A DNA stretch of 64,000 nt from Haliotis rubra (Eukaryota), in assembly GCF_003918875.1 (NCBI RefSeq), contig NW_025767597.1, positions 124,001-188,000 of the forward strand, read 5' to 3'. Shown here one piece after another: positions 566 to 62,696 of the stretch. The notes beneath the pieces were generated by a model that was given only the letters and a program-made list of their open reading frames with translations, was not told where the DNA came from and did not search any database. The translations under genes and the position numbers were made by a program. Position 1 is the stretch's first letter, and the number at the start of each line of letters is the position of its first letter.

Positions 566-3500
566 AGAAATCCGTCCACAAAAGTATTAGTCATATTCAT
601 CACACCATGGTCAAAGAATGACCCCGTCTCTCCAAGCCAAAGGGGCGTCCCAGCAGGAGCATCTGACGTAGCGTTGCGTGCAATGTCCAGCGTCACCTTC
701 AGCCTGTCCATAAACACGGGGTCGGTGAAGTTTGCAAGTCGGCCTTCTTTGCCATTGCCGAAGTAGCTGTGACAGGAAAGAGTTCAGTTCAGAGTGCGTG
801 AAATATATACCACGTTTAGAAGGTGGTGTTGAACATTAATACTGTCATATAGTGTCAGCTCGATGAGGTAACCCCCGAGGTGAAACACACGAGGATGAAT
901 ATGATTGAACAAACCAATAAAAAAACACATATCTAAGGATACAACACAACAGAACTAACTGTGAATGCTGATGAGGGCTGCGCTACCTGAGGGCTGCACA
1001 GCCAAATCATGTCATGTAAGATTAATGTTTAATGAAACACTGACAAATGGTGCAATATCACGAATACTTATATGTTGTTGAAGTTTCAAGCATCGTGGAT
1101 GAGGAGACTCGTGGCTTTGAACCCACGATCAGCAGATCCCGACGCAGTATATTGTCTGGTGCATTTATACGCTCGGTCGTAAAGATAGTAGCATCCAATG
1201 GTTAAAGATAATTAAGTGAGTCAACAGATTATACATTTTCTTTCTGGAACACCCCCACCACACACACGATGCGATAATTAAGAACGTCGCCAGCACGCGT
1301 TATTATTGAGAGCTTATGACATATGTGCCCATGAATCAAACGTTTCCATGACGACGCCATCTGATGGCTCTACCAGCTGTACATTCAATGTACATATTGG
1401 AGTATATGACTTTCACTCACTGATGGAATGTAATGGCGTCCACGGATCGGGCACCTCCAGAGGTCAAGAAGCTATGGAACATAAAAACTGAATATTACCA
1501 TTGCATTTGTCTTGGTTTAAATTAGTAAGTCTTCATCTGAACATGTACAGAAGTAAATACAAGGAATACATAACGAAGTCCACACCTGTGTATAGCTCGT
1601 TTGTTAATGGTAATACATAATACATGTAATCAAGATGGAGTGTTTTGTTGATGATAATGAAAAACATACTCTTTCATGAATGAAATCCCCCTCTCGATGT
1701 AGAATATATCCGGCCCGAGTATCAATGTATCCTTAAAGTATGGACGCTTCCGCAGTTCATCGTGAAAAGTCAGGAAGTCTCTTCCAAGTTGCGAGCCGGA
1801 AATGCTTGTATTGTAATGATCCGGAATACTCAGGGGTTCTGCAGGAAAACATACCCATGCACATGCTGACGGTAATTGGAATTTAGTAAGTTCATGTATG
1901 GCGCGGGGGGCGAACTGGCTAAAGCGCCAGGCTAGTGATAAATAATAATAATAATGGATATTTTTAGCGCGCCATTTTCCACCCACTGATACATGATCCA
2001 GCGAGGTTGAGGTGACGGGATCGAGCCCACCTGTGACCGGGTGTAAAAACCTTGGAGTCAACTTTGTGTGCAGACTCTCTCAGTGTTGTCACAACCCCTA
2101 GTGTACAGTACACAACCCTGTGCACTTAAAAGAACCCACGAATCCGTTGGTATATGACCGGATGGTGGCCACATGAATACGTGCAAACACCCAGTTGCGG
2201 GTACAGCAACGTGCAGTAAACTTGGACAAAGTACTGTGACTATGTGTCCCAGTCCACCCAGCTGTGAATGGGTACCTCGTAAGGATGGGAATGCCACAAT
2301 AACTCGGTGCGCCTAGTGGCTGCAAGAGTTGTATGCTCCCCAGGGAGTTGAGATTGACAATGCTGGANNNNNNNNNNNNNNNNNNNNNNNNNNNNNNNNN
2401 NNNNNNNNNNNNNNNNNNNNNNNNNNNNNNNNNNNNNNNNNNNNNNNNNNNNNNNNNNNNNNNNNNNNNNNNNNNNNNNNNNNNNNNNNNNNNNNNNNNN
2501 NNNNNNNNNNNNNNNNNNNNNNNNNNNNNNNNNNNNNNNCCTACAACAAAGTGTAAGTCATTGGCAAACGAGGTATGTAGTAGTATCTATAGACTGAAGC
2601 AGGGAAGCAGATTCTATGACAAAATGATGATACATCGTATGTGCACCCTCGTACATCACCTTACAATGCATGACGATGTTTTTCCATAATATGGTATTTA
2701 AGATCATATTGCTCGCTGATCGTATCTTGAGTTAGACTAAACACTAAGATTCCTTGTATATTCCTACAAAGTAGGTCATTAATATATTTGTGAGATTGGA
2801 GATATTACTGGCTTACACACGTTTCTCATGGTCCCAAAGCAACATGTTACATATTGTTTTTATCGTTCGTGTTTCATCATTATGCCTTCGAAGGCCTTAT
2901 ACCATTGCCCAGTTCAAAGCCATAGATGTCATATCCTTTCTGGGTTGTGTAGTCGAGCAGTTGGTCGGCATTTGTAGGGTCCCAGCGTCCATCTTTCCGC
3001 TGCAGCACACTCAGACCAAAGATCAGGTCCCAGCCCACATCCCTGGTGAAATTGTTGATTTCGTCCCAAACATGAGCTGCAGTGTGAATTGATTTGAAAC
3101 CATATACAAGTATGTGTAGTATGTGTACAGCGAACAAACATGGATTATTGCTGTTTGAGAATGACATAGTGAATATTCCAGGTTGATTCCATTGATTCTG
3201 TATTTCAGATTAAATGATCGTTATCACCTGCAAATACTTAACATGGGTCAGCATTTACTCAACACTATGTAATTGTTTACACTAATCACCTGTGAGTACA
3301 CTGTCAGATACAGTCGGTGTCTTCAGACTTGGGTTGAACCTCACACCATCTGCATCCGTGCCCCCAATACGGAGTATACAGGGAGAAAACGCACGAGCAA
3401 GGGTCTTTAATTGTGGTGAACTGAAAATGCGTTCTCTAGAGCGTCACCAACATTATTTCACGCTAATGCTACCAACACTTAACACCATCACACTGTAATA

Positions 3501-4392
3501 GTCACCAACGTGTGCAGCTGCAGCAACTACAAGATCTTCTTTATCATTTAAAACATTGATGTCATCAGTGAGGTGAGGTGAAATTGGGTTTAACGTCATG
3601 CTTGAGAATATTTCGCTCATATGACGACGTGCATGCGTGTGTATGTGTATTTGCGGCTGCTTGTACTAGCCCAGACTTAAGCTGGTTTTATAGTGCTAGC
3701 CCACTGAGATACCATACCGCAGTGAAGCATGAATAACCCACTCAGACACAGTTTACCGACTCCGAGCCGACAAGTCCTTGTTGTACCCATTAATGCCGAG
3801 CGCCAGGCAGGGACCAACAAATACCATATTTTGACGTCTTTTGGTATGACGCGGCCGGGGATTGAACCCGCGACCTTCCGCTCTCCGGGCGGACGCTCCA
3901 ACCACTACACCACGGAGGCGGCCATGTCATCAGTGAGTTGATAACGCCTATTTGAAGTGTAGTCCATTTACCTATACTTAGCAACACCAGACAGAGTATT
4001 TTATAACATGTGCAACATGGGGGTAAGCATTATCCTGCTGAAGTGTGATGTTTCGTCTTTGCATAGTGATGAACGGGGTCGCCCTGGTAGCTAACGCCGT
4101 TCAACGCCTGTCAGTATCAATACATAGTGGCATTTAGACTAAGCATATTTAGATGCCTTTTCCTGTGTATACTACATAGGTAACCTATAATTTCTTACCT
4201 AAAATCAACACCAGTGTTTTGGAATCCATTGTGAATCAAGATGGCATCAAATGTGACACCAACAAACCTGTGGTCTATTGTTTGTAGTACCGAATCAGTG
4301 TTGATGTCTACAGACACGGACGACTTTCCACAGACAACAGACAAGGTGCAGATACTGAGTGTCCACAGTAGTACAGTGTCTGTGGCAACCAT
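566..4392 (-). CDS. HPSE-like: Heparanase-like GH79 copy A (divergent paralog; exons 1-6 only, 3' exons lie beyond window start)
   Basis: Exons 4199-4392, 3290-3420, 2903-3076, 1670-1838, 1421-1471, 566-766, all GT-AG and in phase. Signal peptide MVATDTVLLWTLSICTLSVVCG; motifs FVGVTFD, LRIGGTDAD, DLIFGL, FELGN|EP, ILGPD, AITFH, LWLGETGS match heparanase family motifs. Confidence 0.9.
2215..2367 (+). mobile_element. SINE family 3 fragment (core-domain type), runs into gap
   Basis: cttggacaaagtact...cccagtccacccagctgtgaatgggtacc core-like motif; 2280-2355 is reverse-complement similar to 9360-9435. Confidence 0.6.
3573..3923 (-). mobile_element. tRNA-derived SINE, family 1 (Meta/MESC-like core)
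   Basis: A box TGGTGTAGTGG, B box GGTTCAATCCC, (CACCT)n tail, 14-bp TSD atgtcatcagtgag (3559-3572 / 3924-3937); highly similar to 8277-8629. Confidence 0.9.
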
Positions 4393-6380: not shown

Positions 6381-9300
6381 TCAGTCCTGCTGACAGACAT
6401 CCACACCAGCATCAGGGAACACAACGAATCCGAAGGTCGTGGCTGGTATCTGGAGGCTCCCACCATAAGCTCGTTCGGGAGGCATTTCGGGGATGGTGTC
6501 GTTCACATAATCCAGTCGTTTGCCATTTAGAGTTACATTCCTGAAATTAAAACATCTGGGTAATAATATCTATCTTACCTCTTTGGCAGTATGGGACCAA
6601 ACCACGGTCTGCCAACAAGAACCCATCACTTATTCGTTCTACAAAAATGATACCATCTCTACCCTTGAGAGCAATGATGAAGCCACTGGACCTTATTGGT
6701 TGTTCAAGTGCTCAAAGTGTTCTGTATCTTTGTGATTTCAATATCAATTGTCAACTGAAGTAAATAATCAATCTAAATGATCACTTGACAGTAAATGGAT
6801 CTCTGAAAATCAGTGATGACACCAGGTGAGAAAACAGTAAGCATATTTGAAGTGTTGATACATATACTCACCTCGAAGTAAGATCTGGGAACTCTGGACT
6901 GAGCCAGAAAACATCCATATTGGTCTTGAACTGAGGGAAGTTGACGACGGTGGTGTAGTTGTTGACGTTGACGATATAAGCTACAACACTACCTGGTTGA
7001 TACCTGTAGGGACTGAAACAATACATCGTGGACATTGTGAGTAAAGCTGCAAGTTTGTTAAGAACATCACAAATCACCCACTTCCTCATGACAATACTGT
7101 CGGGCATGTTTGCCATGACAGTCATATATGGTTTAATTCTGCTTAAGTTAGTGACTAAGCATGACACATGCTGATAACCAACGTGACCTCTCCCTCCTTG
7201 ATGTTTTTGATTGACGATTCTGATTGATGAAATTATCCTACATCCCCCGTGTGATGAAGACACAATCCACCTTGTACCTTTCCTGTCTGGCACAGTGGGC
7301 GTAGACTCTGAAACTGTTGGTTGAGTTGGTCTGCACAGATAACACCTTGTACCCAACCAGCCTCTTATAGAGCAACGTCAGCCAGTAGTCCTGCAAATGA
7401 CACATTCAAGCGAATGTTAAATATGTGTCGGACATATAACGCTAACTTAGCTATGTCTGTTATTCCTGTAGTGGCGTAAAGTGGTGGCATAGTGGTACGT
7501 TACAGAATATCTAGTCTGCGATCAAGGACTGGCAAATTAAGTCAATACGTTTGTGTTAGCCTCACATTCAACATTATGAGAGTGGGTTAAGATCAACGTT
7601 GCTTGGAATGGTATTACATTGTGTCACAGCTTGAGACGAGGACAGTGTAATGTCAAACGTTTAATCATAACAGGAGGACATTGTCATTAGAACACATAAA
7701 CATGGGTTTCACGCCTGACTATTGCATTTTGGCACAACATATCGACCACATCGCACACACACATGTGCAGTCACACAGCGGACAAAGTGTAATAAAATGT
7801 ACAAATATACAAGTTTTGAGCTTCGTATTTAAATAGCGTGGAAGTAACAAGTAAGGTGAGAAAATACTTTTTCTATAACCTCAAGATATCGTTTCTGTTT
7901 TGCTGATATCGCATTGTTTATCAATGTTCATCACTTCACACAACAAAAGCGTCAGTGAGATGGAACAGTAATTGGTTCAAAAGACAATGCGCTTCAAGTT
8001 TTCGAAGGGGATAGTATGTATTTGTACCTACTGGGTAGGGATCAAACGTGTCCATCTCGATGAGTGAATAATTCTTTCCATAGAACGATTGTCTTAACAC
8101 CCCTTTAAGTCCCATCCGTGCTGCAATCCCGAGCTTGTCTAACCATCTGAAATATTGACAACAATACAATGTACTTGTTGGTGTATATATGATGCAGTAT
8201 GATGCAGTCATGTGACTAGGAAGTTATCTATACCTAGGGAAGTTTCAGCACATATAACCTGCATTAACACACTTGCGGTGGTGGTGGAATTGGATTTAAC
8301 GTCGTGCTTGAGAATATTTCGCTCATATGACGACGTGCATGCGTGTGTATGTGTATGTGCGGCTGCTTGTACTAGCCCAGACTGAAGCTGGTTTTATAGT
8401 GCTAGCTCACTGAGATACCATGCCGCAGTGAAGCATGAATACCCCACTCAGACACATTATACCGACTCCGAGCCGACCAGTCCTTGTTGTACCCATTAAT
8501 GCCGAGCGCCAGGCAGTGACCAACAAGTACCATATTTTAACGTCTTTTGGTATGACGCGGTCGGGGATCGAACCCGCGACCTTCCGCACTCCGGGCGGGC
8601 GTTCTAACGACTACACTACGGAGGCGGTCTAACACACTTGCATTGTTCGTAACGTTTAAGTTTCTTAATGCAGGTTATATGTGCATCAAATATCGGTTGT
8701 ATCAAGAGTCGCAGTTGTATATCGACATCGTTAGCTTCTCTTACCATCATTATGGTGTCGGGTATTGGTTCTTATACGGTGAAATCTCTTGATGCTGCTA
8801 TTTAAAGGCCGCCTGTATAATGCTGGAATACTGCTGATTGCGGGGTTAACGAAGTTGTAAAACTACACAAACATTGCACAGAAGGGATAGAACAAGTCAG
8901 CAGCCACATTTGAACAAATAAAACAAATAGGAATCCCATGTTTCTCATATACTTGAATAAATAGCGTCTATCGAGACGACAGATGTCACCAGTGAGTTTA
9001 TGTCATTTGTTGTTACTTCTTGTCCAGTGTGCAACCCCCAATTGCGTAGATCGATTCTCATACTCTTGATCATTGTCTGGTCGAGAATCGATTATTTACA
9101 GACCGCCGCCATAGGGCTGGAATAATGCTGAGTTCGACGTAAAACTAAACTACCTCACTCCAATGTTCAACCAACCGAGGCGGTTTTTGACCTACAAAGG
9201 TCATGCTTTTGTCAACAAGACCATTGTGCACTGATATTATTATTATTATTATAGTATATTTATATAGCGCACATATCCACGCAACTGGTGCATGCTCAAG

Positions 9301-12300
9301 GCGCTGGTATTTTTCCCTCGATCATTGGATGTCAATCTCAAAGGCACATGATATTATCATTCTCAACGCCCTTGGGAGTATATAACTCTTGCTGCCACTA
9401 GGCGTACCGAGTTATTCTGGCTTTCTCATCCTAACTGATTTTTTTCTTTCACCGTTCCCTGACTTCACTGACTAAACTCTTTCTGTCATCATTTGATTTT
9501 CCTGGTCAAGACTCGTTACTTACTTTCCTTCCATCTGTAGCTTAAATACTGACTTTCTGACAAAACAACATTTATTCAACTGGCATTGTGTAAGGCACAC
9601 AAAAGAGACGCTGACCATTTGTATACTAATATTGTGGTACGATACTCACAGAAAGCCGGCCACATATCTGTTAGAAAGTCCCGGGGCTCCCCCTCCCGAG
9701 AAAGACGATGTCTCACCGAGCCACATGGGAGTGTTGGGGTCGGCGGGGATGGTGATGTTGCGTACAGTGTCAATAGAAATTATTAAACGGTCCATCACTT
9801 CAGGGTCAATGAAGGTGCCCACTTTGGCAATGCCTTCGGGGCCGTAGTACCTACAAGTAATTAAACCAACATCCAATTAGGTTATAAGAGCTGAAATATC
9901 GTCTACCGTCGTATACAAGAAAAATAACAGGAGCCATGTTTAAACGTATTTCAAAGATTGTTATATGGCCGGGTATCAACCCGCCAGTTTTCTCCTCTAA
10001 GGGCAGTCACTCCACCCACTAGACTACATGGGAGAGCTTGCCGAAATTATGTATTCATGCTGCTATCCCTTATTGATTGAAGAGCTACAGCCTGCCAAAA
10101 TCCGTATATTTGAAAAGACAAGTAAGATAGCATACTCACTGGTGGAAGGATATTCTGTCGAGAGGTTTTCTTCCTTCCCCTTCAAAGAAACTGTAGAAGA
10201 TAAAATGTAAGTCTGTTTATAATGTCCCACCGGGAACATTAAGTATAATCATGTTATATACCTCTGATTTTCCAACACAGTATGTATTTGTTTAGAATTT
10301 TAATAACGCGGTTAAGGTAGAATAGAGATAAACATACTGTGTTGGAAAATCATCAGAGGTATATAAGGAAACTATAATGGCTCTTAAATAAAAAGCATTA
10401 GAGATATTATTACTTCGTTATATACCTCTGATTTTCGAACACATTATGCTTATCTCCAAAATAACTGAATGTTGACAGCCTGACTGTCAATACGGAGATG
10501 ATATCATCGTATCAATACGTATCAATACGATGCTGTGTCATGTCTCAGAGCCAAAATAACAATTATACTATTTTGCAGGATTTCTGTTTGTACGTTTCCA
10601 CTCACGTTTTAAGAAATTCTAATTTATGTCCAAAGACTGCTGTTACGTCGGGTCCGATCACCAGAGTAGAATTAAACCCGGGAGTAGACTTGAGGATTTT
10701 CCTCAGATGGACAAAATCTCGCCCCAGCTGTGTTCCAGATATTGTGTTGTTGAAGGGCGGGGGGAAACATGCAGGTTCTGGAGAACACAACAACATTAGA
10801 GTACAGTGTCTAGTATGTGAGTGAGTGAGTGAGTGAGTTTAGTTTTACGCCGCACTCAGCAATATCCCAGCTATATGGCGGCGGTCTGTAAATAATCGAG
10901 TCTGGACCAGACAATCCAGTGATCAACAGGATGAGCATCGATCTGCGAAACTGGGAACCGATGACATGTGACAACCAAGTCAGCGAAACTGACCACCCGA
11001 TCCCGTTAGTCGCCTCTTACGACAAGCATAGTCGCCTTTTATGGCAAGCACATGGGTTGCTGAAGACCTATTCTACCCCGGATCGTCTAGTATGTGACTT
11101 TTGCCATACATATACCTGCATTCATCAAGCACTCCACAGATGACTTTGATTTATGCATGAACTACAACGAGGGCATGTTTTGGTAGTTCGCCTTGATGAA
11201 AAAATAACGAAGAGGGGAATCTTGTACACAATGCTGCTGCAACACTGACAACGATGACAACGGGACTGTCGCTGGATCGTTCCCCTGTTCGTCGATCCAC
11301 TCTGTTCGTCGATCCGTCGATCCACGCAGGTTGACATCGGCATCGACGTCGCCAGACAAGACCACGTACATCAAGGACGTTAAACATGAAAGTACGATTG
11401 ACATCTGTGACCATACAGCTGTTGGAAAATGACGATTTGTAAGAAACGGCACCCCACATAGCCGTCCTGCATAGATAAGAGCTGCACATAGGCAGTTTCT
11501 GATCGTCTGAGCAGTAACTTGAGGTCCAGTAGCCTTATGTAAGTTTGCAGCAGTTTGAGTCGCTGTCTCACATCGATTGGTTATGCGTGGTTTCGGGTCA
11601 ATAGGCCCCTGTACTCTTGCGGTTGGCATAGGACTCCCTGAAAATGAACCCTGGTTTATCACGGGAATAATGGCTTTCCTAGAACCTGTTCCACAGCTTG
11701 CTACAACACACACTGGAACATTGTAGTACGTATTTGCTACCGTGATTCCAATGATTTCGTGTAGTTGGAATATTGCTGGGTGGGGCGTTAATCAACAAAC
11801 AAACTTTGGCATTGTACGCTGACTGCTGGGGAAACCGACAACCCCACACGCTGTGAAGATGGTGCATCGCTAGTGCATAAACAATTCAGACTGCAGGATA
11901 CGCAGAATGAGTGACAGACATAGTAGTGGTCAGCAGATACTCACTGACCTTCTTCAGAAGTTTCTCGCCGTGATATTGCTGGAATATTGCTAAAAGCGGC
12001 GTAAAACGATAACCACTCACTCCTCGGAAGTTTAAATCAGACATGATCATCTACACATGTGTTTGGCGCTACTCCTTGCGAATAGCGAACACTATCGGAT
12101 ATTTTGTGGAAAGTATTTACAGGCATAAATATTTTTGCATAGGATATTTGCCGTCAATAATTGTCATTGTTCTTTGGTATCAGGACTCAATCCTTTATTT
12201 CCAAGAGAACATTTATATCATTAAATGAGTTATAGAACAGTTGATCTAAAGAAACGCATAAACAGAGGCCCGATCCACAAAGCGTTCGCAGCACTACGTT

Positions 12301-44400: not shown

Positions 44401-46134
44401 AGTAGGACAAACCTCAGACTTCTGTAAATGACAAAAACCTGAATGTGAATTGCCTTTATATTGTACTGATGAATAAATCTGCTTGTTAATACTGTTATGA
44501 GGATGTGTTTGTGTTACTTATAATGTCACATTAATTAACCTTTCGTTGTTATGGACCACAAAAGTGTAAAGGGCTGAATGTGGATTTGAACTGGCATCTT
44601 GAACTTGGTTTAGACTGGTGGTGTGGCGTCGCTTTTGCTAGAGTGAGTGAGTTAAGATTTACAGTCACATCGACAATATTTCAGCCATATCGTGACTAAA
44701 ACAAGTTTAGAACTTTGCTAGAAATATCTAGAACTGTATGATAGGTATATACGGGATTGTTGTTGAGATGTAAGGGGGTAGTACTTTGGATTTACGCTCA
44801 TCTGTCTGCTGACACCGACGTGGCCTTGACTACATTGAACTTTCAACATCAATACGGTGATGGCTGTTACGTCGGGACCGATAACAAGGGTAGATTCAAA
44901 CCCAGACGTAGACTTGAGGATTGCCCTGAGATGGGCAAAGTCTGGCCCCAGCTGTGCTCTAATTGTAATGTTGAAGGGTGGGGGGAACCATGCAGGTTCG
45001 GGGGGAACAACATGAGAGTACAGAATATGGGATGTGACTTTTCACATACCTGTATTCATATAGAACATAGCTGACTTGGAGACATGTATGATTTAAAACA
45101 TGCTCTTTTAATAATACCAGGAATCCGGGAAGATTTCTAATATGGCATACAAAGACGACTGTTATAATTTACCAATAGGCTATGGAACTATACACTACCA
45201 TTTCCCAGTTCAAATGCGGGTATCCTGTAGTTCTTGGAATTGGTGTAGTTCATCAGTTCTATGGCGTTTGCAGAGTCCCATTGTCCGTCTTTCTGCTTTG
45301 ACAACACATTGAGGCCAAACACCAAGTCCCATCCAACAGTCTTCACGAATTCATTTAAATTGTCCCAAATAGCACCTCAATGATAAAATACATATTCATA
45401 ATTTGGCATGCGTGTTAGTAACTGTGATTGATTCTGGTCGTAAATATGAAGGTTTTTATGGTATGTGTCTAGGGTTCGTGAAAGATGATCTCACTGCTGA
45501 CAAAGTCGAGTTTCAACTTGCATGTGGCAATTAGAAACCGTAACGCTGTTTTCAACGCTGTTACTCCAGGTTACCCCGAAATGAAACTGTAACGGTCCTT
45601 ATGTTTCAAGTTATGAACCGGTCCCACCATTATTCACTGCAATGATTAGAGCTAGTCACAAAACGTACCAGGACATATAACTATACCTGTATATGTGGAG
45701 TTTGCACTTGTACCCTCATGACCTGTTGGGTCAAAGGTGAAGTAGTCTCCAGTTGTTCCGCCTATTCTTAGGTAGGATGGTGATATTGCTTTAGCCAGAG
45801 TCTGGACTTTAGGTGATCTAGTTTTAGAATATAAAATATTTTCAGAATCTTTACAATTATTAACCTTGGAAAATAGTCATGAATAATGTATATTGATTTC
45901 TGTCATTGTTAACTAATACAAGCTATTTATCTGTATGATGTAAGCCCACTCACCTGAAATCAAGTCCATACCAATTAGCTGATAGTGGTAGCAATGATGC
46001 ATCAAGCGTCACTCCAACGAAACGGTCATCTATCAATCCTATTTCTTTGTCTGTGGCAACAGTGACAGAAACAGATTGACTGTGTGTACATTGCACAAGG
46101 AACAGAGAATAACGAGCACACGTCTCACATCCAT
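38474..46134 (-). pseudogene. HPSE-like: Heparanase-like GH79 copy E, pseudogene
   Basis: Exon homologues 45954-46134 (181 nt, 4-bp deletion, stop at codon 32), 45687-45817, 45199-45375, ~44850-44998 (acceptor AG>CG, 3' end and donor lost), 43335-43385, 41370-41570, 40873-40987, 40364-40476, 39168-39308, 38474-38627. Confidence 0.88.
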
Positions 46135-50600: not shown

Positions 50601-52043
50601 TGAACAAGCAATGGCTTTTACTTATACACATAGACGAACACTCCAGGAAGAGGATCATTATGTTACACAAAGACGACTAGTCTACACTGAATATATGAAC
50701 CGTTGACATATACATTACCATTTCCGAGTTCAAATGCTGGTATTTTGTAGTTCCTGTCCTGGCTATACTTCATCAGTTCTTCGGCGTTTGTAGGGTCCCA
50801 TTGTCCGTCCTTCCGCTTCAGGACATTGAGGCCAAACACCAAGTCCCATCCCACAGTCTCCAGAAAGGCGTTAAGCTTGTCCCACATAGCACCTCAGATA
50901 TGAAATACACATGTTTATCATACAAGTGCTACGTTCTCAGCACGATAAAGCCAACGGAAAGACATTTTACCCTGATAAATATACTAATGTACAAAGTTCA
51001 CGTAAGAACTAGTTTCAATGTTTACAAACATTGTGTCGTCGTAATATAATTACAGTCCATTTAAAAAAATCAATTTTAGTGAGGATCGCTGATTTCAGAT
51101 TTCAGGTCCAGACTTGAAGTGCAGAAATTTGAACTGAACCTAATCTGGTTATTATTCAAATGTTCTTTAAAGCATGTCATTTTATGGATGAAAAGGCAAA
51201 GATACACTTTACACTTTACGATGGCTAATGAATGCGATGAACCTGTTTAAGGTCATGCAGTTATGACAGTCGTTACATTGAATACAAATCGAAAATATAT
51301 GCCATGTGCTCACACCGTGCTTCTCATGATCAATACAGTCAGTCAATACACAGTCATTGTAAATGAATGCCAACTCAAAGAGTTGATTTTTAATAAATAA
51401 AGAGCGGTATAAACTAATTCAACACGATTCATTTTGTTTGTTTTGACATACACCTCAAATATAGAAACATACCAGTGTATGTAGCGTTTGGACTTGTACC
51501 CCCATGACCTGTTGGGTCAAAGGTCATGAAGTCTCCAGGTGTTCCGCCTATTCTCAGGTAGCACGGAGACAATGCTTTTGCCAACGTCTGCACCTTGGGC
51601 GAGCTAGAAACAAATCTTATAATGAACTATGCACTCACAAGACAGAGTATATGTATTTGAAATTTAAAATTGATTACACATGTGTATGTCAAATAGCGTA
51701 AACATAACTATAATATATAACACATAAGTGAACTAGTATTCCCTCCTAGAATCTTAGCCTATCGAATTAATAGATTTGGGCCTAATTGGGAATCAAATCT
51801 CACGCCAGCAAAATGGTCATCTAAATGCTATATATCGACACTGTGTAAATTCACTCACCTGAAATCAAGTCCATACCAATTAGCTGATATTGGCAGCATT
51901 GTTGAATCAAAGGTCACTCCAACAAAATGGTCATCTATTGTTGCTATTGCCTTGTCCGTAGCAACAGTGACCGAAACAGACTGACTCACTGTACATTGCA
52001 CATGCAGGGAACATAGTATAAAGAGCATACGTTTGGTAGCCAT
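47660..52043 (-). CDS. HPSE-like: Heparanase-like GH79 copy F, 10 exons, apparently intact, compact introns
   Basis: Exons 51859-52043, 51473-51603, 50719-50892, 50068-50239, 49331-49381, 48975-49175, 48623-48737, 48399-48511, 48070-48210, 47660-47813. Motifs FELGN|[23 protein letters not shown]; GC donor at intron 9. Confidence 0.93.
49529..49690 (+). mobile_element. Degenerate SINE family 2 copy in gene F intron 4
   Basis: cccgtaaagatccgggttagaatttgatcttcagtaacccatg... with internal deletions. Further fragments at ~9040-9160, 28605-28755 and 38712-38832. Confidence 0.7.
49790..49978. repeat. ~190-bp imperfect palindrome (MITE-like)
   Basis: atgacaagaatttatggatgatcaactcctttattttgacaatggcgac... 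mirrored by ...gtcgccattgtcaaaataaaggtgttgatcatccataaagtcttgtcat. Confidence 0.75.
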
Positions 52044-53002: not shown

Positions 53003-53006
<4 letters not shown>

Positions 53007-54260: not shown

Positions 54261-57200
54261 TCACTGGCTACTGCAGGCAGCCACACCAGCCTCAGGGAAG
54301 ACGAGGAACCCGAATGACTTCCCGGGGAAGGTAACCGTGTTTCTTTCCGTCCTGTAAGGTTTCAGCTCCGGCAGCGTATTATTGACAAGCTTTATCGGGT
54401 TGTTGTTCAAGGCCACGGTCCTGAAATGGTGAAGATGGAACAAGTGCTTTGCATGTTACTTATATTATTTTGTATACTCCCACACGATATCTGCACGTAT
54501 AAATAATAGTGTTGGTTTGGCCGGCCACTCACATAACGTGGTTTTCTGTGGTTTTCTAGAAGAAACTTAGTTTAATTTACCACCTGTAACATCAATCTAA
54601 ACTCTCGATTTGTAAATTCCCTGTTGCTGAGTCGATAGATTGATGTGAACCAGAAAGGCATCTATAGGTTGACAAATGGAATTATTTGCCAGTGTGTCTA
54701 TTGAATGGTGTAAACTAGAAAACGTTTAGATTGAAGGAGGACTTACTTGCTGGTGAGTCCATCGACTGGCGTCAGCCAGAACACATCTACAGGTTGGTCG
54801 GGAAATTGTGGAAACGTAATAGAGGTAGTGTTATCCGTGGGCAGCAGGAAGTACATCGTCACACTTCCGGGCGCGTAGCCATAGGAACTAAAACACAACA
54901 CTAAATTTTAGAGGACCGTTTCCTTAGCATGAACATGAATCTGAACTTATTATATTTTACTCCATATTCTGTATTGATTATGTTTGATTTTCAGTGGCGC
55001 ACGGAAGAAGACCTACGTACTTTATTATTTGATTAAAATGTGAACAAACGGTTGGCAAAAGTGTCTGGGCATCCAATCCTGTTCCCGGGCAGGTCATATC
55101 AGAAAACATCAATATATAGTACATGCTATGTACATCAACCTCATCTATTGTACAGACATTCATCTGGCGTCCAATCTGGTTATTCTCTAATTCATTATTT
55201 GTACGTATCTAACTGGCTTCAAATCAACTTACTTACTCTCAAATCAACTTACTTACTCTCTTACACAAGATCCGTACATCAGCCTATGAACCCATATATA
55301 CTGTATCTACTGTATACACAACTCATCCCCAATCTATTGCAATAGCAGCTCACGTATATATTCCCTCACATTGTTTCTCATGTATCACTTGCTTGACAAT
55401 GACATTAGAATCTATGTCGACACGTCGCCTTTCACAGAATAAAGAAGTTGTATATCCATGGAATTGTCATCATTGTTCATGACATATCTCAGTGAACTAG
55501 AAGGTTATCATAGGTCCATAATATTCAACGACTATATCAATCCCTGTGAACTTATTCAACATACCAACTGCCAGGACAAGTCCCTTCATACTTTCGTGAT
55601 ACCTAACCTCACATCGCATCCGTTCATTCAACAGATTTTTCTTACTCTGAATTTACGTCTTAGCAGGCTAATGCTTTAAAATATCTGGCTGCATTTTGTG
55701 TTTTGAAATTACATGGATGGCTTTGTGCAGTGGGCGTAGGCTCTGATGGTGCTGTTGTCCACGCTTGCCTCCACTGAAAGCACGGAACCTCCGACCAGTC
55801 TCTTATACAGGACAGTTAACCAGTAGTCCTGCAGAGGAACGCATGAACAAAACAAACTCATTAGCTTACATCAATATAAATAAAATATAGGAATGATTGA
55901 CTCCTCTACAACCATATTTTGTTGAGTTAAATGTTCAGTGATATTTATTGCTTTAAGAATTTTATCTGTGAAATGTTTGAGAAAAGAAATAATGAATTAG
56001 ACTAACTATTTGTCATTGTAACGTCTATTCAATATTTCAATGAACTCAGTGCGGTAAGTATCCATTCTGTTACGCAACATCATCTGCAGTCGTCTTTGGC
56101 AACGAAAACATAAATATGTTTCATCGTTATCACAGAAACTGCTTTTCCAAATGAAGTGTAACTGAATATAAACTTCTACTAGGACAAACGTCAATATGAT
56201 CAAGAATGTGTAACATCAGTGAAAGTGAGTGATTATGCCTCATTAGAAATCTTGCTCCACTTCATTTATATTTAATCAAATTCATTGCATGATGGGTAAT
56301 TTTCTCATTCCTTGATAAAAATGCACAGCATTCATCCAACTTTGGCTTTTTTCACCGCCTGCTTTAATAATCACAGTCGTGATTAATACAACATCATCCC
56401 AACTGACTCGTACATAAAATATCAAACATAATTAGGTTGAGATTAACCATGCTTGAATTTTCAATGAAACACTCACACCACTGGGCTTAAAGGCAACATT
56501 GCGGTACAGTCTATATAATAATAGAGGGTCACTGAAACTCAGGGATTTATTGTTGTAGGTGCTACATGTGTCTACCATTCCCAGTGATTCGTTATCCTAG
56601 CAGGAAGATGCCACCATGCCCATCCCTACACGCACCAGCCACATCGCCTGAGAAAGGTTTGATTTACAGGGCTGGATTTTTTTGTAAGCTAAAACACTAT
56701 CCTTGAAAACATTTGATCCAGCAGCAAGGAACGCTTAAAACCAGAGAAGCGTGCGCCGTGTACATGCACACTATATACATATATATGAACATACTTCCAG
56801 TTTCATTCATACGGGCAGTGGGTCAATGGTCGTCTCTATACTTACAGGCAATGGATCAAAGGTATCAGTGTCAATCAGTGGATAGTTGTCAACGTAGAAA
56901 TCCTGTCTGAGAACTGCTTTCAAGCCCATCCTGGCAGCAATACCAAGCTTGTCCAGCCACCTGGACAGCGTACACTTTCAAAAGGTGGTGTAGAAGTTGC
57001 AATAGAATGTACGTGTGCTGTGACTTCAGCCCATTTCTACATTTAAGGTCACAACATACGTGTCTGTTGTTTTACTAAACGATTTACGAATGAAGGCAAA
57101 TGTTATCTTGGGCTACTTATTTTGTAAATGTCACTTGAAAAAGCATTATCATGAACTACCATCAGTCATCATTATGCGAGTACAGTTGACTAAAGAACAA

Positions 57201-60200
57201 TTAGTTGACTAAAGTACAATGTGTATGTGTGAATTTTTGTGCTGATTTTTTTACGCACAGAAACCCAGCGACATATCTATCGGAGACTCCCGGAGCTCCG
57301 CCGTGATAACAGGAGGACGTCTCTCCCAGCCAGACTGGAGTCAGTGGGTTGGTGCGTCTTGACACATCCAGCGCTGTCTGTATGGCACTGACTAGTGTGT
57401 CCATCAACTTGGAATCTGTGAAATTGGGGAGTTGTGCGGTATCGCCGTTGGTGTAGTAACTGTCGATAGATTGGTAGATTGCAATTGTTGAGTCTCCGAT
57501 AGCAATTAATCGATGGAAGAAACGAAAAACTATCGACGCATCGATAGTATGTGTGACTATTGATAGTTTAGTAGTTGACTTCCGTTGGTACATGCGCAGC
57601 GCAAAATACAGGGTGTTTGGGTGCAGACTTAGTAGCTTCAATGAGATTGTTTTAACTGTTTACCTGACCTGGGTTTCAAGTTTCTTGCCAGTTATTAAAT
57701 ATTTCATATAAACTATACATTCATTTGGAAAACGACTTCAAATAGTTTTGCAGTAGTTGCTCTATAGACTATCGCTATCGCAATAGTATGTTGCAATAGA
57801 CTATCGCTTTCGCAATAAATGTAGCTGTTTCCCCCTCAATAGTCACCCTTAGTATTTTTCATATTTCTTGTCAAGTTGGAAGTATAGCTAACAAGTAAAA
57901 CGTGATAATTTACTCAGTAGCATGCCTTTTTTATACCAGCAGCCACGCCTATCATGATGAACTTCCACGACAGATGATAAAAGACTGTATATCAGAAAGT
58001 CAGTTCAAGTCATTTTCATGTAATAAATGTGGACATATTATATATGAACTGAATGATCTTTCACTAAGCCAAGGATGTATTGATGGAACTGTGTCAAAGA
58101 ATGTTAGATATAAGATTAGAATATTAAACCGTGCACGAAATGGTATTTGAGCATTGTAGAACATAAATATCAAAATCATTTGCACCTACTGGTGAAAAGT
58201 AATTCTGTCAACGGCCCTGTCTCCTCCTGCTCCGAAGAAACTGAAAAAACAAAAATGAATGATCATGGAAGTTTGCGTGGTTTAATATGTGTTCCTTGGT
58301 CGATAGCCGAGCATCATCTTCATAAATGATAGCCACGCATATCAATGCCACACTTGAGGCCACTGTGGCCAAGATTCCAACAGAGGCAGGATACCCTACG
58401 TGAAAATAATATAGCTGATCGCGATGTAATAGAACGCGACAAATCATGCTAGATTAGACCCTAGATGGTTGAGAAGATGTCTGGTTACACTTGACCAAAG
58501 CTCTATTGTATTGTAGCTTCCAAACCACTGATAAGATTACATGGTAATACATTCCTTACAACGAAAGGGTTCTGTTATTGAGAAGAAGATACCTTTCATG
58601 CCTGGGTATTAGCTTTGCGACCATGTGCACGACATGCGTATTTCTGAATTGTGTCATCGACTGAGCAGGATACCGAGTGTCATCACTGGTTTTGGTGATT
58701 CATAAACGCATGTATATTGTATTGTTTACGGTTGGACATGCTTACACCCACATGTGGCGCATTTGTTTGATAGTCAAGACTTGTTAGTTTCGCATTTGTT
58801 TGATAGTCAAGACTTGGTAGTTTCGCATTTGTTTGATAGTCCAGACTTGGTAGTTTCGCATTTGTTTGATAGTCAAGACTTGGTAGTTTCGCATTTGTTT
58901 GATAGTCAAGACTTGGTAGTTTCGCATTTGTTTGATAGTCAACACTTGGTAGTTTCGCATTTGTTTGATAGTCAAGACTTGGTAGTTTCGCATTTGTTTG
59001 ATAGTCAAGACTTAGTAGTTTATGCCAACGATCACTTTTATGTGAGCTGGGTCTATGTTTCTGTTGTTGGACTGAAGTCCCAGAATTGTATCAATGCCGA
59101 GTCAAGTACAAAGGAAATGGGCGGTCCACTACATTCAAAGCTGACGTCCACTGTGTTGTCAATCAAACAGTTTTCCTCCTTGTAAGCCCCCGAATCCTTG
59201 TGTTCCTGCACGGTGGTCGTAATTATAATTAACAACAGGAAGGTCTGCGCCATCGACCACTGTCATTACAGTTCTGCCGTGTTGCGCCGGGTTGTATACT
59301 TCCTTCTCCAGGCAAATTGTGGGAGTGGCTGGTGCCACCGACACTGTAGATATCTTCATAGTTCAAGTGGTCCGTTCATAAAGTGTTCACTGTTATTTTG
59401 CCCCTTTTACCTGGGAATTCTGTTTCTGAGGAACGGCAAGATTACATATGCATTTGTACTGACGTTTGCCATGTAGTAAACGTGGTGAGCAGTGAGAAAG
59501 CACCATGTGGAATGCTGGTCTACCTCACTGATGACATCTAGGAAATATGTTTGGGAAAAACGCTTAGAAAATAAAGAAGCATCCCCATGGTAACCAGTTG
59601 TGCTCCCCTTCTTTCACATTAGTTTCTTTCAATGCATATGAATCGGAATTTCTGTCGATCTGGGTGCAATCAAAACAAAGTAGCATAATTTGGTCGTCCG
59701 AAAAACATTAATTAACCAATCCAATCTGAGTTGTTGACATACTTAAATGAGTAAAATGAGATGATTGTTTCATACTGAGATCTTTGCATAGAGAATCAGA
59801 CAGATTATCAACTCTCCTAAAGGTCGTGTGACAAGAGGGATGTCTTCAGCCTTCCGACAGTCAGATTTCAAGCCCCTCCTTTGGTGGTTATATTTCAGAA
59901 CGTTTGAGGCAGAATCGAACATGGCCTGTTTGCCACTAGTGTCAGACGACGTTTGGATGACAAATGTTCATGGCATATACGGAGTCGCACAATCAACTTT
60001 GCTCATGAGCGAGGTTTTCTGTGAACATGTATTGCGGTCAGTGAACCCCCTACGTATCAGTTATCCTCGTTCGTATATTATTCTCATAAATGATGACAAA
60101 GCGTTCATCGTGATGTGTTGTGGGGAATAGGAGAGGTCCAACGTTATATGTATATTCACATTGCTCACACACAGAACACTCTGTAGAAGCGAGGAAAATA

Positions 60201-62696
60201 TACAAACTATTTGTTGACTGGGTACAATTTATTTTATTATGTAAGCATATTTTTCCGGCTACCTGATCTTACTGTTGTCATGAAAATATTACATTCATTA
60301 AAAAACGACGACGCATTACGCACACTATAGTTTTGTCCCGATACGTCATGTGTGTATTTATCAGTCAGGTATCCTGACTGCATAGTAGACCGCGAGCAGG
60401 ATTTTGCCGGTCGCTGGAAACGTCCAATAATTTGTTTGTACGAGCTGGACAGCCGCTCACCTGTAATTTTGGTTAACAGCTGGAATCTCACCTGTGTTTT
60501 GTGTGTACACGTCAGAAATTCCGTTGAACTTGTTATTGTTGTTTCGCCTGCCCAATGTTGACAATTCGATTTATGTGTTACCTTGACGTTCCAGTATATC
60601 TTACATAATGCCATTACGATAATTTGACTTATGATCCATGCCTGTACCAAATATTTGCCAACACGAACGCTCTTGGTCACTTATATTAAGGATGAAGCAA
60701 AGAAAGTACTCAGTATAATTTGGTTGGGCTCATATAAACTGTATGGCCACGGCTCTGGCGATGTACTCACTCAGCAAAGAACTGTGTACTTGATCCAGTT
60801 ACAGAGGCCACGTCAGGTCCAATTACTGGTGTTGTCTCATACCCGGGTGTCGATCGGAGCAGCTTCTTGAAGTTGTCGAAGTCCATACCTATCTGTCTGC
60901 CACTCACAGTGATGTTATATTGCTCAGGGAATATGTCAGGTTCTGTAAAAAATAACACTTTTCTGAGAACATAAGAGGAATGTTATTTTCAAGTCATTCA
61001 TAATAGTAGGACCTGTACCCTGATTTTGAAGAGAAGTGGCAAAATTCTCGAATTCAAAAGTTATGAGATTTGCACAATTTTGCACATTGTAATTTGGTAT
61101 GTTAAAGTAGAATCATTTAACATGGTAACTTTCAGCCACATCTTTCCATGCATATGGTTATGTCAATACCATTTCCGAGTTCCAGGCCTGCCAGTTGGTA
61201 CCCCTTCGCACTGTTGTATTGCAGCAGTTCTTTTGCGTTGGTAGGATCCCACTTCCCCCTCCTTCCTCTTCAGGGCGTTCAGACCAAATATTAACTTCCA
61301 GTCGACATCCTGGACAAATGTATTAAGAGCATCCCAGGAAGCTCCTGCAGACACAACAGACTTAACGATAGTGAGATCACAAATACCTAAAATGTTGGAA
61401 TATTCGGAGCATCTGTTATCGTGAGCCCCCAAGAGGACTGCACTGGCCTCCTGGATATACATATATGTGCAATACCATAGCTCAACAAACTATTAATATA
61501 ATAAGGAGATATACGCACCTGTAAAAGTATGATTGACATCTGTTGTGCCATGACCTGTAGGGTCAAAGGTCAGGTTGTCACCCCCCAGTTCCTCCAATCC
61601 TCAGATAGCATGGAGACAAACCTTTCGCCAGGGCCTGAACTTTCTGAGAGCTGGAGGTAAACAGCAGCGTGGCACTAGGAAAATCTTGGTACTGAGTTAC
61701 CACCTTTTTACATAATGGCGTCGAGGCAGGAACAAAGAGTTCAAATAAATATCACACATATACAATGTATTAACGGATAAAACACCAAAACAGAAATGGC
61801 ATAATGTATTTACATACATTCCGTTTCTGCGCTCAACGGTTTGGATACAATGTTCTTACAGACATCTGCTAAAACATTGGCGGATCCAGAGAGAGAGGAG
61901 GGTGGGGGTGGGGCGGTCACGGGGTTCGACCCTCCCCTTTTAAAAAATGACTTAAGACCACATGGAAGATTTTANNNNNNNNNNNNNNNNNNNNNNNNNN
62001 NNNNNNNNNNNNNNNNNNNNNNNNNNNNNNNNNNNNNNNNNNNNNNNNNNNNNNNNNNNNNNNNNNNNNNNNNNNNNNNNNNNNNNNNNNNNNNNNNNNN
62101 NNNNNNNNNNNNNNNNNNNNNNNNCCCATGTAATATGACCTAGTTTAGTTTCTTAGTGGTTAGCCTTATCAGGACCTTTGGTCTGTATTTTTCACTAATT
62201 TGCCTGAATGTAGATTTGAAATATGACGTGCCCCAAAGTTCAGATACAATAAACTATGTTTTTTATCAGAGGGACCACAAATTTGAGTTTGATATATCTG
62301 TCGTTCCTTATGTGTCGTTCTAAAGTTCTAAAATATTCAGCACCTAGTCGGGAAACAAGCAGTTCGTTGTGTTCGTTATTGTTCTTTATGAACGTAGCGT
62401 ACTGCATGAGTGTGCCCCGAATACGATTTAATAACTTCAAATGGAAGGAATCTTCAATAACATGATAGCTGCTGACTTCTATGCCGATCACCTTGACATA
62501 CTTACTTGAAGTCTAATCCTCCCCAGTTCGCTGAGGCAGGCAGGAGATGGGAGTCCAGAGTGACGCCAATGAATAAGTCATCAATAAATGAAACTACTTG
62601 TGTTGTTAAAACTGTGACGCTGACATTGACTCCTGCCGTTGCTGTGTGGGATATAAAAGTGGTGACCAGGAGAAGCGCTGGCAGTGTTCCCTTCAT
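54261..62696 (-). CDS. HPSE-like: Heparanase-like GH79 copy G (divergent paralog); two +1 G-run frameshifts as assembled (sequencing error or recent pseudogene)
   Basis: Exons 62506-62696, 61519-61650 (132 vs 131 nt), 61170-61344 (175 vs 174 nt), 60771-60942, 58190-58240, 57259-57459, 56846-56960, 55713-55828, 54747-54887, 54261-54420. Motifs LELGN|[34 protein letters not shown]|DYWL, C-terminal EAGVAAC. Confidence 0.87.
58758..59020. repeat. 33-bp minisatellite, ~8 copies, gene G intron 4
   Basis: Unit cgcatttgtttgatagtcaagacttggtagttt in direct tandem, no spacers. Confidence 0.95.

What the first reader, a model, noticed from the sequence alone, without database searches (positions are those of the whole stretch)
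566..62696. Seven-gene tandem array of secreted heparanase-like GH79 enzymes in a probable gastropod: candidate undescribed endo-glucuronidase system
Seen: seven co-oriented copies with the same exon architecture, signal peptides and both catalytic Glu motifs (NEP, LGET), from near-identical (C/D) to deeply diverged (A, G). Established: vertebrates have one active HPSE plus HPSE2; GH79 also includes leech hyaluronoglucuronidase and microbial/plant beta-glucuronidases. Inference: a birth-and-death expansion with diversified binding loops fits a digestive or mucus/matrix-remodelling battery acting on uronic-acid polysaccharides (e.g. algal ulvan/glucuronan, hyaluronan, chondroitin), not housekeeping heparan-sulfate turnover.
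Basis: partly seen in the sequence, partly recalled or inferred. Interest (0 to 1): 0.85.

Follow-up and report, generated by a model that had tools for sequence, protein, structure and literature searches.

The report
Abalone tandem heparanase-like GH79 gene array
This is a real run of seven head-to-tail heparanase-like (GH79) enzyme genes in the blacklip abalone genome: three are intact, one is cut by the window edge and three are damaged. It is part of a larger abalone-specific family that databases already label "heparanase-like" but whose substrate nobody has tested.

Summary
The window is Haliotis rubra contig QXJH01000866.1. All seven GH79 genes lie on the minus strand and share ten exons with identical intron phases.

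- **Intact:** B, D and F (478-480 aa).
- **Cut by the window:** A has only exons 1-6 here. RefSeq shows a full 483-aa gene.
- **Damaged as assembled:** E (4-nt deletion, lost acceptor, destroyed exon-4 end), C (acceptor shifted 1 nt, LINE in intron 4) and G (two +1 insertions in G-runs, unverified).
- **Assembly gaps:** all lie in introns or between genes.

A and B are identical to RefSeq "heparanase-like" proteins. H. asinina carries the same array in the same order. In my tree, 38 of 40 Haliotis sequences form one genus-specific clade, apart from a canonical heparanase-like gene.

The enzymes keep both catalytic glutamates and, except in A, the glucuronic-acid subsite. They lack the proenzyme linker and all three basic residues that human heparanase uses to bind heparan-sulfate sulfates. 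Paralogues evolve under purifying selection (dN/dS about 0.25).

My best reading is secreted, always-open endo-beta-glucuronidases in a birth-and-death family. The substrate is probably not sulfated heparan sulfate. I could not test tissue expression or a digestive role. The scan separately noted another array 185 kb away.

The parts
567..4392 (-). Gene A, subfamily I. Exons 1-6 only: 4392-4199, 3420-3290, 3076-2903, 1838-1670, 1471-1421, 766-567. Exons 7-10 lie before the window start.
   Evidence: Splice model. It is 100% identical over 306 aa to RefSeq XP_046553587.1 (P0259, 483 aa). The public gene call runs about 2.9 kb past the window start. The loop after the nucleophile reads GETGSFFDHGV instead of GETSSxYGGGAP.
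6381..13507 (-). Gene B, intact, 480 aa. Exons 13507-13323, 13174-13044, 12712-12539, 10777-10606, 10190-10140, 9850-9650, 8146-8032, 7390-7278, 7012-6872, 6540-6381.
   Evidence: All introns are GT-AG and the reading frame is open. It is 100% identical over 480 aa to RefSeq XP_046553603.1 (P0260).
15481..24511 (-). Gene C, compromised. The exon-3 acceptor AG (23856-23855) is shifted 1 nt relative to B, D, E and F. The frame is kept only if the weak donor after 24035 is used, which adds the residues IAICPI. Intron 4 (23371-19380) holds a LINE.
   Evidence: With the canonical donor the product has 19 stops. The public gene call covers only a 222-aa 3' fragment, window 18250-15481.
20203..22660 (-). 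LINE retrotransposon remnant inside intron 4 of gene C. It has two adjoining ORFs of 541 and 276 aa.
   Evidence: Pfam hits: Exo_endo_phos 2.4e-14 and RVT_1 1.4e-22. It is absent from the matching place in D.
28375..34905 (-). Gene D, intact, 478 aa, and a mosaic. Exons 34905-34721, 34578-34448, 34249-34076, 33937-33766, 33338-33288, 32364-32164, 31352-31238, 30482-30370, 29313-29173, 28528-28375. Intron 9 has a GC donor.
   Evidence: Open frame. DNA is 98% to 91% identical to C from 35900 down to 30302, and 90% identical to E from 30498 down to 27899. dS between C and D is 0.05 in the 5' part and 0.44 in the 3' part.
38474..46134 (-). Gene E, pseudogene-like. Exon 1 (46134-45954) has a 4-nt deletion near 46095. 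The exon-4 acceptor at 45000-44999 is CG. The exon-4 3' end and donor are replaced after about 44863. There is also a 3-nt deletion. Exons 5-10 are still open.
   Evidence: Contigs agreeing with the deletion are seen in runs X5 (about half of the depth) and X7 (all of it), from two other studies. The H. asinina orthologue XP_067659035.1 is intact and 88% identical.
47660..52043 (-). Gene F, intact, 478 aa. Exons 52043-51859, 51603-51473, 50892-50719, 50239-50068, 49381-49331, 49175-48975, 48737-48623, 48511-48399, 48210-48070, 47813-47660. Intron 9 has a GC donor.
   Evidence: Open frame. It is 91-93% identical to H. asinina XP_067658195.1 and XP_067659070.1.
54261..62696 (-). Gene G, subfamily III. 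It has ten exons, but as assembled it carries two +1 insertions: one in the G-run 61586-61581 (exon 2, 61650-61519) and one in the G-run 61259-61255 (exon 3, 61344-61170). The rest is open. An assembly gap lies in intron 1.
   Evidence: It is 85-88% identical to P0160, P0161 and P0164. The alignment with P0160 is continuous across the gap-bearing intron. The frameshifts were not checked against reads.
2368..2539 (.). Assembly gap in intron 3 of gene A.
35944..36104 (.). Assembly gap between genes, about 1 kb upstream of D's start codon.
61975..62124 (.). Assembly gap in intron 1 of gene G, 325 bp upstream of exon 2, which carries one of the two frameshifts.

Best explanation
The window holds a 62-kb stretch of a much larger, abalone-specific tandem cluster of GH79 (heparanase-like) genes in Haliotis rubra.

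**What each gene encodes.** An intact gene encodes a protein of about 478 aa with a signal peptide. It has a (beta/alpha)8 barrel plus a beta-sandwich. It is a retaining glycosidase, with the acid/base Glu in ELGN-EP and the nucleophile Glu in LGETSS.

**How the enzymes most likely work (inferred).**
- The segment matching the 6-kDa proheparanase linker, and the pocket-forming loop of exo-acting GH79, is only about 15 residues long. The cleft should therefore be open without proteolysis, giving constitutively active endo-beta-glucuronidases.
- The glucuronic-acid (-1) subsite is kept in B-G. G has His at the Gly349 position.
- All three basic residues that bind heparan-sulfate sulfates in human heparanase are missing, and the proteins are acidic. 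The substrate is therefore probably a glucuronic-acid polymer other than highly sulfated heparan sulfate.

**How the family evolves (shown).** It turns over by birth and death. D is a C/E hybrid of the kind unequal crossover makes. E is dead. C and G are damaged as assembled. The intact copies are under purifying selection.

**Shown versus inferred.** Shown here: gene structures, lesions, orthology, fold and residue states. Inferred: secretion, endo action and substrate class. Unknown: tissue and physiological role.
For: **Identity and gene models**
- GH79 identity.
- Gene models. Models A and B equal RefSeq XP_046553587.1 and XP_046553603.1 on QXJH01000866.1.

**Conserved array and family history**
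- Orthologues in H. asinina are 88-92% identical. They lie in the same order, F then E then C/D.
- In an 85-row tree, 38 of 40 Haliotis sequences form one clade with SH-aLRT 98. This clade is separate from a Haliotis plus Gigantopelta 'canonical' clade. Patella/Lottia and Littorina show independent expansions.

**Structure and active site**
- AlphaFold2 model of orthologue P0151: pLDDT 93.6. TM-score is 0.90 to human proheparanase 5la4 and 0.88 to leech hyaluronidase 7eyo.
- The linker segment is 15 aa, against 62 in the mammal. The loop rationale for exo versus endo action comes from PMC9500389.
- Asp62, Thr97, Asn224, Glu225, Tyr298 and Glu343 are kept in all copies (E's Glu225 codon survives but its exon-4 acceptor is lost). 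Gly349/350 and Tyr391 are kept in B-F.
- Lys159, Arg272 and Arg303 are absent in all seven. Their role comes from PMC6892829.
- Calculated pI is 5.1-6.2, against 9.35 for the mammal.

**Selection and turnover**
- dN/dS is 0.23-0.28.
- Lesions. Mosaic D.
Against: - There is no expression, secretion or activity evidence. No RNA run was found, and all four laid runs are DNA-like contigs.
- Low pI and a short linker are also seen in coral and sponge homologues. These two features alone do not separate the array from ordinary invertebrate heparanases.
- The structure was predicted for an orthologue about 90% identical, not for a window protein. Cleft geometry could not be inspected.
- Lesions in C and G rest on the assembly alone. 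G's lie in homopolymers near an assembly gap and could be errors.
- The tree used a quick search and only the 120 best-scoring hits. The leech enzyme was not in it.
Confidence: 0.72

Rival explanations
1. The copies are ordinary heparan-sulfate-degrading heparanases. They were multiplied for dosage or tissue-specific expression and act on the animal's own heparan sulfate or heparin-like glycosaminoglycans.
For: By sequence they are closer to human heparanase than to any other solved GH79. P0001 scores 314.6 bits to 5la4, 250.4 to leech 7eyo and 57 to bacterial enzymes. The -1 subsite is conserved. RefSeq names them 'heparanase-like'. In bivalves GH79 is highest in hemolymph and gill, not hepatopancreas (PMC7560691).
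Against: Lys159, Arg272 and Arg303 are all missing. A separate Haliotis gene clade (XP_048250306.1 and XP_046-series P0185, grouping with Gigantopelta) keeps basic residues at or beside most of these positions and a 31-aa linker. That clade is the better candidate for the housekeeping enzyme. The bacterial heparanase BpHPSE shows that GH79 endo-enzymes can prefer low-sulfated substrate (PMC9500389), so heparan-like but unsulfated targets remain possible.
Confidence: 0.18
2. They are exo-acting beta-glucuronidases that remove terminal glucuronic acid. This is the kind of activity for which abalone and limpet extracts are sold.
For: GH79 includes exo-beta-glucuronidases (PMC9500389). UniRef labels some Patella homologues 'Beta-glucuronidase'. 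Abalone beta-glucuronidase preparations are widely used (papers listed). I found no sequence link to GH79.
Against: The loop that closes the pocket in the exo-enzyme AcaGH79 is 40 aa, and 24 aa in the endo-acting BpHPSE. The matching segment here is about 15 aa. Fold matches to the Acidobacterium enzyme are much weaker (TM about 0.73, 18% identity) than to the endo-enzymes.
Confidence: 0.07
3. The array is partly an assembly artefact. Uncollapsed haplotypes or mis-joins would inflate the copy number, and the lesions would be sequencing errors.
For: The assembly has gaps beside D and inside G. C and D share a 2.2-kb stretch at 98% identity. G's two frameshifts are single-G insertions in G-runs 325 bp and about 720 bp from a gap.
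Against: - The copies differ by 7-56% at protein level.
- D's 3' part is only 90% identical to E and about 80% to C, so it is not a haplotype of either.
- C has a LINE that D lacks.
- A, B, C/D, E and F each have their own orthologue in H. asinina, and F, E and C/D lie there in the same order.
- B, D, F and A show no frame error in 5.2 kb of coding sequence.
- E's deletion is seen in contigs of two other studies.
Confidence: 0.05
4. They are non-catalytic glycan-binding pseudoenzymes, like vertebrate HPSE2.
For: HPSE2 shows that the fold can be kept without activity (PMC12406646).
Against: Both catalytic glutamates and the -1 subsite are kept in every readable copy. dN/dS of about 0.25 includes those sites. 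HPSE2's hallmark is a retained linker that occupies the cleft (PMC6892829), and that is absent here.
Confidence: 0.03

Closest known systems
RefSeq 'heparanase-like' genes of Haliotis. H. rubra: XP_046553587.1 and XP_046553603.1. H. asinina: XP_067659153.1, XP_067658911.1, XP_067658912.1, XP_067659035.1, XP_067658195.1 and XP_067659070.1.
   Same: A and B are these very H. rubra proteins (100% identity). The H. asinina proteins are the 88-93% identical orthologues of A, B, C/D, E and F. They lie in a co-oriented array in the same order.
   Different: Those records are automatic predictions with a generic name. H. asinina has one C/D gene and an intact E. H. rubra has the extra hybrid D and a broken E. 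I found no paper describing the family.
Human heparanase HPSE (GH79, EC 3.2.1.166; PDB 5E8M, 5LA4)
   Same: It shares the fold (TM 0.90) and is 34-39% identical. It has the same catalytic Glu pair and glucuronic-acid -1 subsite, and a signal peptide.
   Different: There is no 6-kDa linker, so no cathepsin-L activation step is needed. Lys159, Arg272 and Arg303 are missing. The proteins are acidic, not basic. There are many tandem copies instead of one gene.
Leech hyaluronoglucuronidase LHyal (GH79, EC 3.2.1.36; PDB 7EYO) and the leech hya1-hya5 family (PMC13368403)
   Same: It is a single-chain lophotrochozoan GH79 endo-beta-glucuronidase that aligns end to end in one stretch. TM-score is 0.88 at rmsd 2.8 A. 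In leeches it is a multi-copy family with a pseudogene, interpreted as birth-and-death tied to feeding.
   Different: Sequence similarity is lower than to human heparanase (250 against 315 bits). Leeches have five copies that predate speciation. Haliotis has at least 17 in H. asinina. Activity on hyaluronan is untested here.
Bacterial GH79 enzymes: the Burkholderia pseudomallei heparanase (endo) and the Acidobacterium capsulatum beta-glucuronidase (exo)
   Same: They share the fold and the -1 subsite logic. BpHPSE shows that a short loop gives an open groove and a preference for low-sulfated substrate (PMC9500389).
   Different: Identity is only 18-20% and TM-score 0.71-0.76. The abalone loop is shorter than in either.

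Membership tests
Glycoside hydrolase family 79 (GH79) | Significant match to the family profile (Pfam PF03662 Glyco_hydro_79n) | tested here: met
   The exon 3+4 read-through of C scores 43.7 bits, E 2.5e-11, against a cutoff of 23.1. All full-length orthologues carry PF03662.
Glycoside hydrolase family 79 (GH79) | [quoted passage not shown] | tested here: met
   AlphaFold2 model of orthologue P0151, which is 89-91% identical to C and D. pLDDT is 93.6. Foldseek gives TM 0.90 to 5la4 and 0.88 to 7eyo. This was tested on the orthologue, not on a window protein.
Glycoside hydrolase family 79 (GH79) | Acid/base Glu in N-E-P and nucleophile Glu in G-E-T | tested here: met
   Present in A, B, C, D, F and G after splicing. 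Both Glu codons are also present in E, but its exon-4 acceptor is lost.
Glycoside hydrolase family 79 (GH79) | Glucuronic-acid -1 subsite: Asp62, Thr97, Asn224, Gly349-Gly350, Tyr391 (PMC9500389) | tested here: inconclusive
   Met in B-F. G has His at position 349. A has Asp-His at 349/350, and its orthologue P0003 replaces the G-N-Y(391) motif by PGWVFHN. Subfamily I may not bind a uronic acid.
Vertebrate-type heparanase (EC 3.2.1.166) | Basic residues making the electrostatic contacts with HS sulfates: Lys159, Arg272, Arg303 (PMC6892829) | tested here: not met
   Lys159 is deleted. Arg272 is F, S, T or E (the stretch is destroyed in E). Arg303 is G (B, C, D, E), S (F), D (G) or K (A).
Vertebrate-type heparanase (EC 3.2.1.166) | Latent proenzyme with an excisable 6-kDa linker (Ser110-Gln157) | tested here: not met
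   The FDP-to-NSTY segment is 15 aa, against 62 in the mammal.
Vertebrate-type heparanase (EC 3.2.1.166) | Endo-cleavage of heparan sulfate | not testable with these tools
   This needs recombinant enzyme and an assay.
Leech-type hyaluronoglucuronidase (EC 3.2.1.36) | Closer kinship to LHyal than to heparanases; cleavage of hyaluronan at GlcA | tested here: not met
   P0001, P0003 and P0175 all score higher against human heparanase than against 7eyo. Activity is not testable here.
Exo-acting GH79 beta-glucuronidase | Long loop (40 aa in AcaGH79) that closes the cleft into a pocket | tested here: not met
   The matching segment is about 15 aa. The criterion comes from PMC9500389. Pocket geometry itself was not inspected.
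Tandem birth-and-death multigene family | Co-oriented paralogues, orthologues shared across species, lineage-specific duplicates and pseudogenes | tested here: met
   with the lesions.

The most novel reading that the evidence does not exclude
The Haliotis-specific GH79 clade may be a new functional class of animal GH79. H. asinina has at least 17 genes, and H. rubra would have at least 13 within about 300 kb if the neighbouring array noted by the scan is counted.

- The enzymes would be secreted, constitutively open endo-beta-glucuronidases that have lost heparan-sulfate recognition. They would digest glucuronic-acid polysaccharides of algae or biofilm, or remodel the animal's own mucus.
- The same expansion would have arisen convergently in other rock-grazing gastropods (Patella/Lottia, Littorina).
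- Subfamily I (gene A) would have rebuilt the carboxylate-binding site for a different sugar.
Probability: 0.25. Interest if true: 0.65.

Novelty: new member of a known kind. Interest (0 to 1): 0.38.

Why it matters
Animals are usually described as having one active heparanase. Published counts give 1-4 GH79 genes in seven molluscs (PMC7560691) and one in a land snail (PMC10295696). An abalone genus with well over a dozen copies is therefore a clear lineage-specific expansion of a medically well-studied enzyme family. These copies keep the catalytic machinery but have dropped the heparan-sulfate-binding residues and the activation linker.

If their substrates were identified, they could explain part of how grazing gastropods handle uronic-acid polysaccharides or their own mucus. 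They could also supply naturally single-chain, always-active endo-glucuronidases for making defined oligosaccharides, as the leech enzyme already does.

As it stands, this is a correct but mostly ordinary gene-family finding. It is already visible in RefSeq annotation, and there are no functional data.

Tried and rejected
1. **RNA evidence.** The four runs I laid all cover introns, so they are DNA-like. No splice joints or tissue information came out. Contig depth cannot be used for copy number, as the tool itself states.

2. **E's 4-nt deletion in reads.** In X1 the only contig at that place carries the extra ACAT. Its depth is about four times the single-copy depth, so I read it as the collapsed exon 1 of the paralogues. 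Only X5 and X7 are informative.

4. **Residue mis-assignment.** In one search I mis-assigned human Tyr391 to the Tyr of P-D-Y-W. The correct residue is the Tyr of G389-N390-Y391, fixed. The 'G389' column is also wrong and should be ignored.

5. **Literature.** Searches for abalone or Haliotis heparanase, abalone beta-glucuronidase plus GH79, and mollusc endo-beta-glucuronidase found nothing specific.

6. **Spliced window proteins could not be submitted.** B, D and F have no reference form, so I did not submit them to the large searches or to structure prediction. I used orthologues and, later, the identical RefSeq proteins instead.

7. **A slip on my side.** That goes against the instruction on long sequences. 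I did not repeat it and read them from a file afterwards.

8. **Assembly duplicates.** Considered and rejected; see the rival explanations.

9. **Species.** H. asinina was my first guess for the window's species (about 90% identity). I rejected it once H. rubra proteins matched at 100%.

Full report
**What is in the sequence.** The window has 40% G+C and four N runs. Comparing all stop-free six-frame segments with each other gave exon-sized families of six to seven members, all on the minus strand. One exon read-through matches Pfam Glyco_hydro_79n (E 2.5e-11) and the 50-kDa subunit of human heparanase (E 4e-12). A HMMER search of 1.8 billion representatives returned a 479-aa protein, P0001, that is 79% identical. 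I used it as a guide and solved every exon junction by donor/acceptor search.

**Gene structure.** All copies share ten exons. In B these are 185, 131, 174, 172, 51, 201, 115, 113, 141 and 160 nt (exon 10 is 154 nt in C, D and F). The intron phases are 2,1,1,2,2,2,0,2,2.

**State of each copy.**
- B (480 aa), D (478 aa) and F (478 aa) are open from ATG to stop, with canonical splice sites. The exception is a GC donor at intron 9, which C, D, E and F share.
- A is open through exons 1-6 and then leaves the window.
- E has a 4-nt deletion in exon 1 that separates the signal peptide from the rest. It also has a CG in place of the exon-4 acceptor AG, a replaced exon-4 3' end and a 3-nt deletion.
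- In C the exon-3 acceptor has moved by one base, so the normal donor gives a frameshift. Only a weak donor 19 nt downstream keeps the frame. Intron 4 of C holds a LINE with endonuclease and reverse-transcriptase ORFs.
- G has two single-G insertions in G-runs, in exons 2 and 3, and is otherwise open.

**Assembly gaps.** The three gaps flagged by the scan lie in A intron 3, between D and E, and in G intron 1. Alignments to identical or orthologous proteins run across the two intronic ones without missing residues.

**Where it comes from and what is already known.**
- The guide protein and its relatives are RefSeq 'heparanase-like' proteins of Haliotis.
- My models of A and B are 100% identical to H. 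rubra XP_046553587.1 and XP_046553603.1.
- The public record is GCA_003918875.1 contig QXJH01000866.1. The window corresponds to about 124001-188000 of it.
- In that record A continues about 2.9 kb past the window start. C is called only as a 222-aa 3' fragment, which fits C being damaged.
- H. asinina has orthologues at 88-93% identity for A, B, C/D, E and F. A fetched H. asinina locus shows the F-type, E-type and C/D-type genes co-oriented in the same order.
- The array therefore predates the split of the two species. D is an H. rubra-lineage addition.
- D's DNA is 98%, then 96%, then 91% identical to C over its 5' two-thirds, and 90% identical to E over its 3' third. dS between C and D is 0.05 against 0.44 in the two parts. 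This is the pattern expected of an unequal crossover between C and E.
I did not check that.

**Family history.** I built a tree of 85 sequences.
- 38 of 40 Haliotis sequences fall in one clade (SH-aLRT 98). The window samples three of its subfamilies: A; B-F; and G, which I assigned by similarity because it was not in the tree.
- Two Haliotis sequences instead group with the vent snail Gigantopelta. They look like the canonical single-copy gene.
- Patella/Lottia and Littorina show their own expansions.
- Published counts are 1-4 GH79 genes in seven molluscs (PMC7560691) and one in Achatina (PMC10295696). My hit list holds at least 17 distinct H. asinina proteins, 16 of them on one chromosome.
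- I found no paper on the Haliotis family.

**How the enzymes probably work.**
- *Fold.* The AlphaFold2 model of the C/D orthologue is confident (pLDDT 93.6). It matches human proheparanase (TM 0.90) and leech hyaluronidase (TM 0.88) far better than the bacterial exo-glucuronidase.
- *Catalysis and -1 subsite.* Both catalytic glutamates and Asp62, Thr97, Asn224 and Tyr298 are kept in all copies (E's Glu225 codon survives, but its exon-4 acceptor is lost). Gly349/350 and Tyr391 are kept in B-F.
- *Open cleft.* The segment that forms the 6-kDa linker in proheparanase, and the pocket loop in exo-acting GH79 (PMC9500389), is 15 residues here against 62 in a mammal. An open cleft and endo action without proteolytic activation are therefore expected. 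Sponge, coral and chiton homologues are just as short, so this is probably the ancestral state rather than an abalone novelty.
- *Lost sulfate contacts.* Human heparanase makes its only electrostatic contacts with heparan sulfate through Lys159, Arg272 and Arg303 (PMC6892829). None is present in any of the seven copies. The canonical Haliotis paralogue keeps basic residues at or beside most of these positions.
- *Charge.* The proteins are acidic, with pI 5.1-6.2 against 9.35 for the mammal. The coral homologue is acidic too.
- *Variable loops.* Among copies B-F and their orthologues, the most variable stretches align with the human Arg303 loop and with residues about 275-281. Position 389, next to Tyr391, differs in almost every copy.
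- *Constraint.* Overall dN/dS is 0.23-0.28, so the intact genes are constrained.
- *Subfamily I.* Gene A has Asp-His in place of Gly349-Gly350. Its orthologue also lacks the G-N-Y motif, so this subfamily may have changed its -1 sugar.

**What could not be shown.** No RNA-seq holder was found, and the four runs laid are DNA-like contigs. Expression, tissue and the proposed digestive or mucus role therefore remain untested. The reads did show contigs that agree with E's 4-nt deletion in two other studies. G's frameshifts lie in homopolymers close to an assembly gap and could be assembly errors.

**Verdict.** The tandem array is real. It belongs to a known enzyme family and is already annotated generically in this genome and its relatives. 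The count of working genes in the window is three, plus the window-cut A, not seven. The reading that these enzymes are not tuned to sulfated heparan sulfate has residue-level support. The ecological role is open.

Noticed in passing
window 20203-22660 (minus strand): A LINE retrotransposon remnant sits inside intron 4 of gene C. It has endonuclease (Exo_endo_phos) and reverse-transcriptase ORFs, with one stop between the two. It is absent from the matching place in D.
   Followed up: partly
window 49460-50060: A stretch in intron 4 of gene F has summed contig depth of 10^5 to 10^6 in all four runs laid, with many loose ends. It looks like a very high-copy interspersed repeat of Haliotis genomes.
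   Followed up: no
window 15900, 29173, 39168, 48070 (last base of exon 9 in C, D, E, F): Intron 9 has a GC-AG splice pair (AG|GCGAGT or AG|GCAAGT) in C, D, E and F, but GT-AG in B and G. It is a shared derived character of that subgroup.
   Followed up: partly
window 27899-35900: Gene D is a mosaic: C-like (91-98%) in its 5' part and E-like (90%) in its 3' part. The switch lies near exon 8 (about 30300-30500). H. asinina has a single C/D gene at this place.
   Followed up: yes
window 567-660 (gene A exon 6) and P0003 residues about 325-340: Subfamily I replaces the Gly349-Gly350 loop by Asp-His. In the full-length orthologue the Gly-Asn-Tyr391 motif is replaced by PGWVFHN. The glucuronate carboxylate site seems rebuilt while the catalytic glutamates stay.
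   Followed up: partly
window 16934-17056 and 30962-31128: A 21-bp tandem repeat (6 and 8 copies) lies at the same place in intron 7 of C and of D.
   Followed up: no
window 58758-59021: A 33-bp tandem repeat, 8 copies at 97% identity, lies in intron 4 of gene G.
   Followed up: no
window 1-126: A 20-bp AT-rich tandem repeat (6.3 copies) runs up to the first assembly gap (127-338), inside intron 6 of gene A.
   Followed up: no
L002 5258-8027 (window 18250-15481): The public gene call for copy C is a 222-aa product with no Pfam hit on record. It covers only exons 6-10.
   Followed up: partly
window 49164 (gene F exon 6): In run X1 one contig carries an extra G here, at about half of the summed depth. 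That contig has 12 other differences and 7 gaps over 207 bases. It may be a divergent allele or a paralogue laid on F.
   Followed up: no
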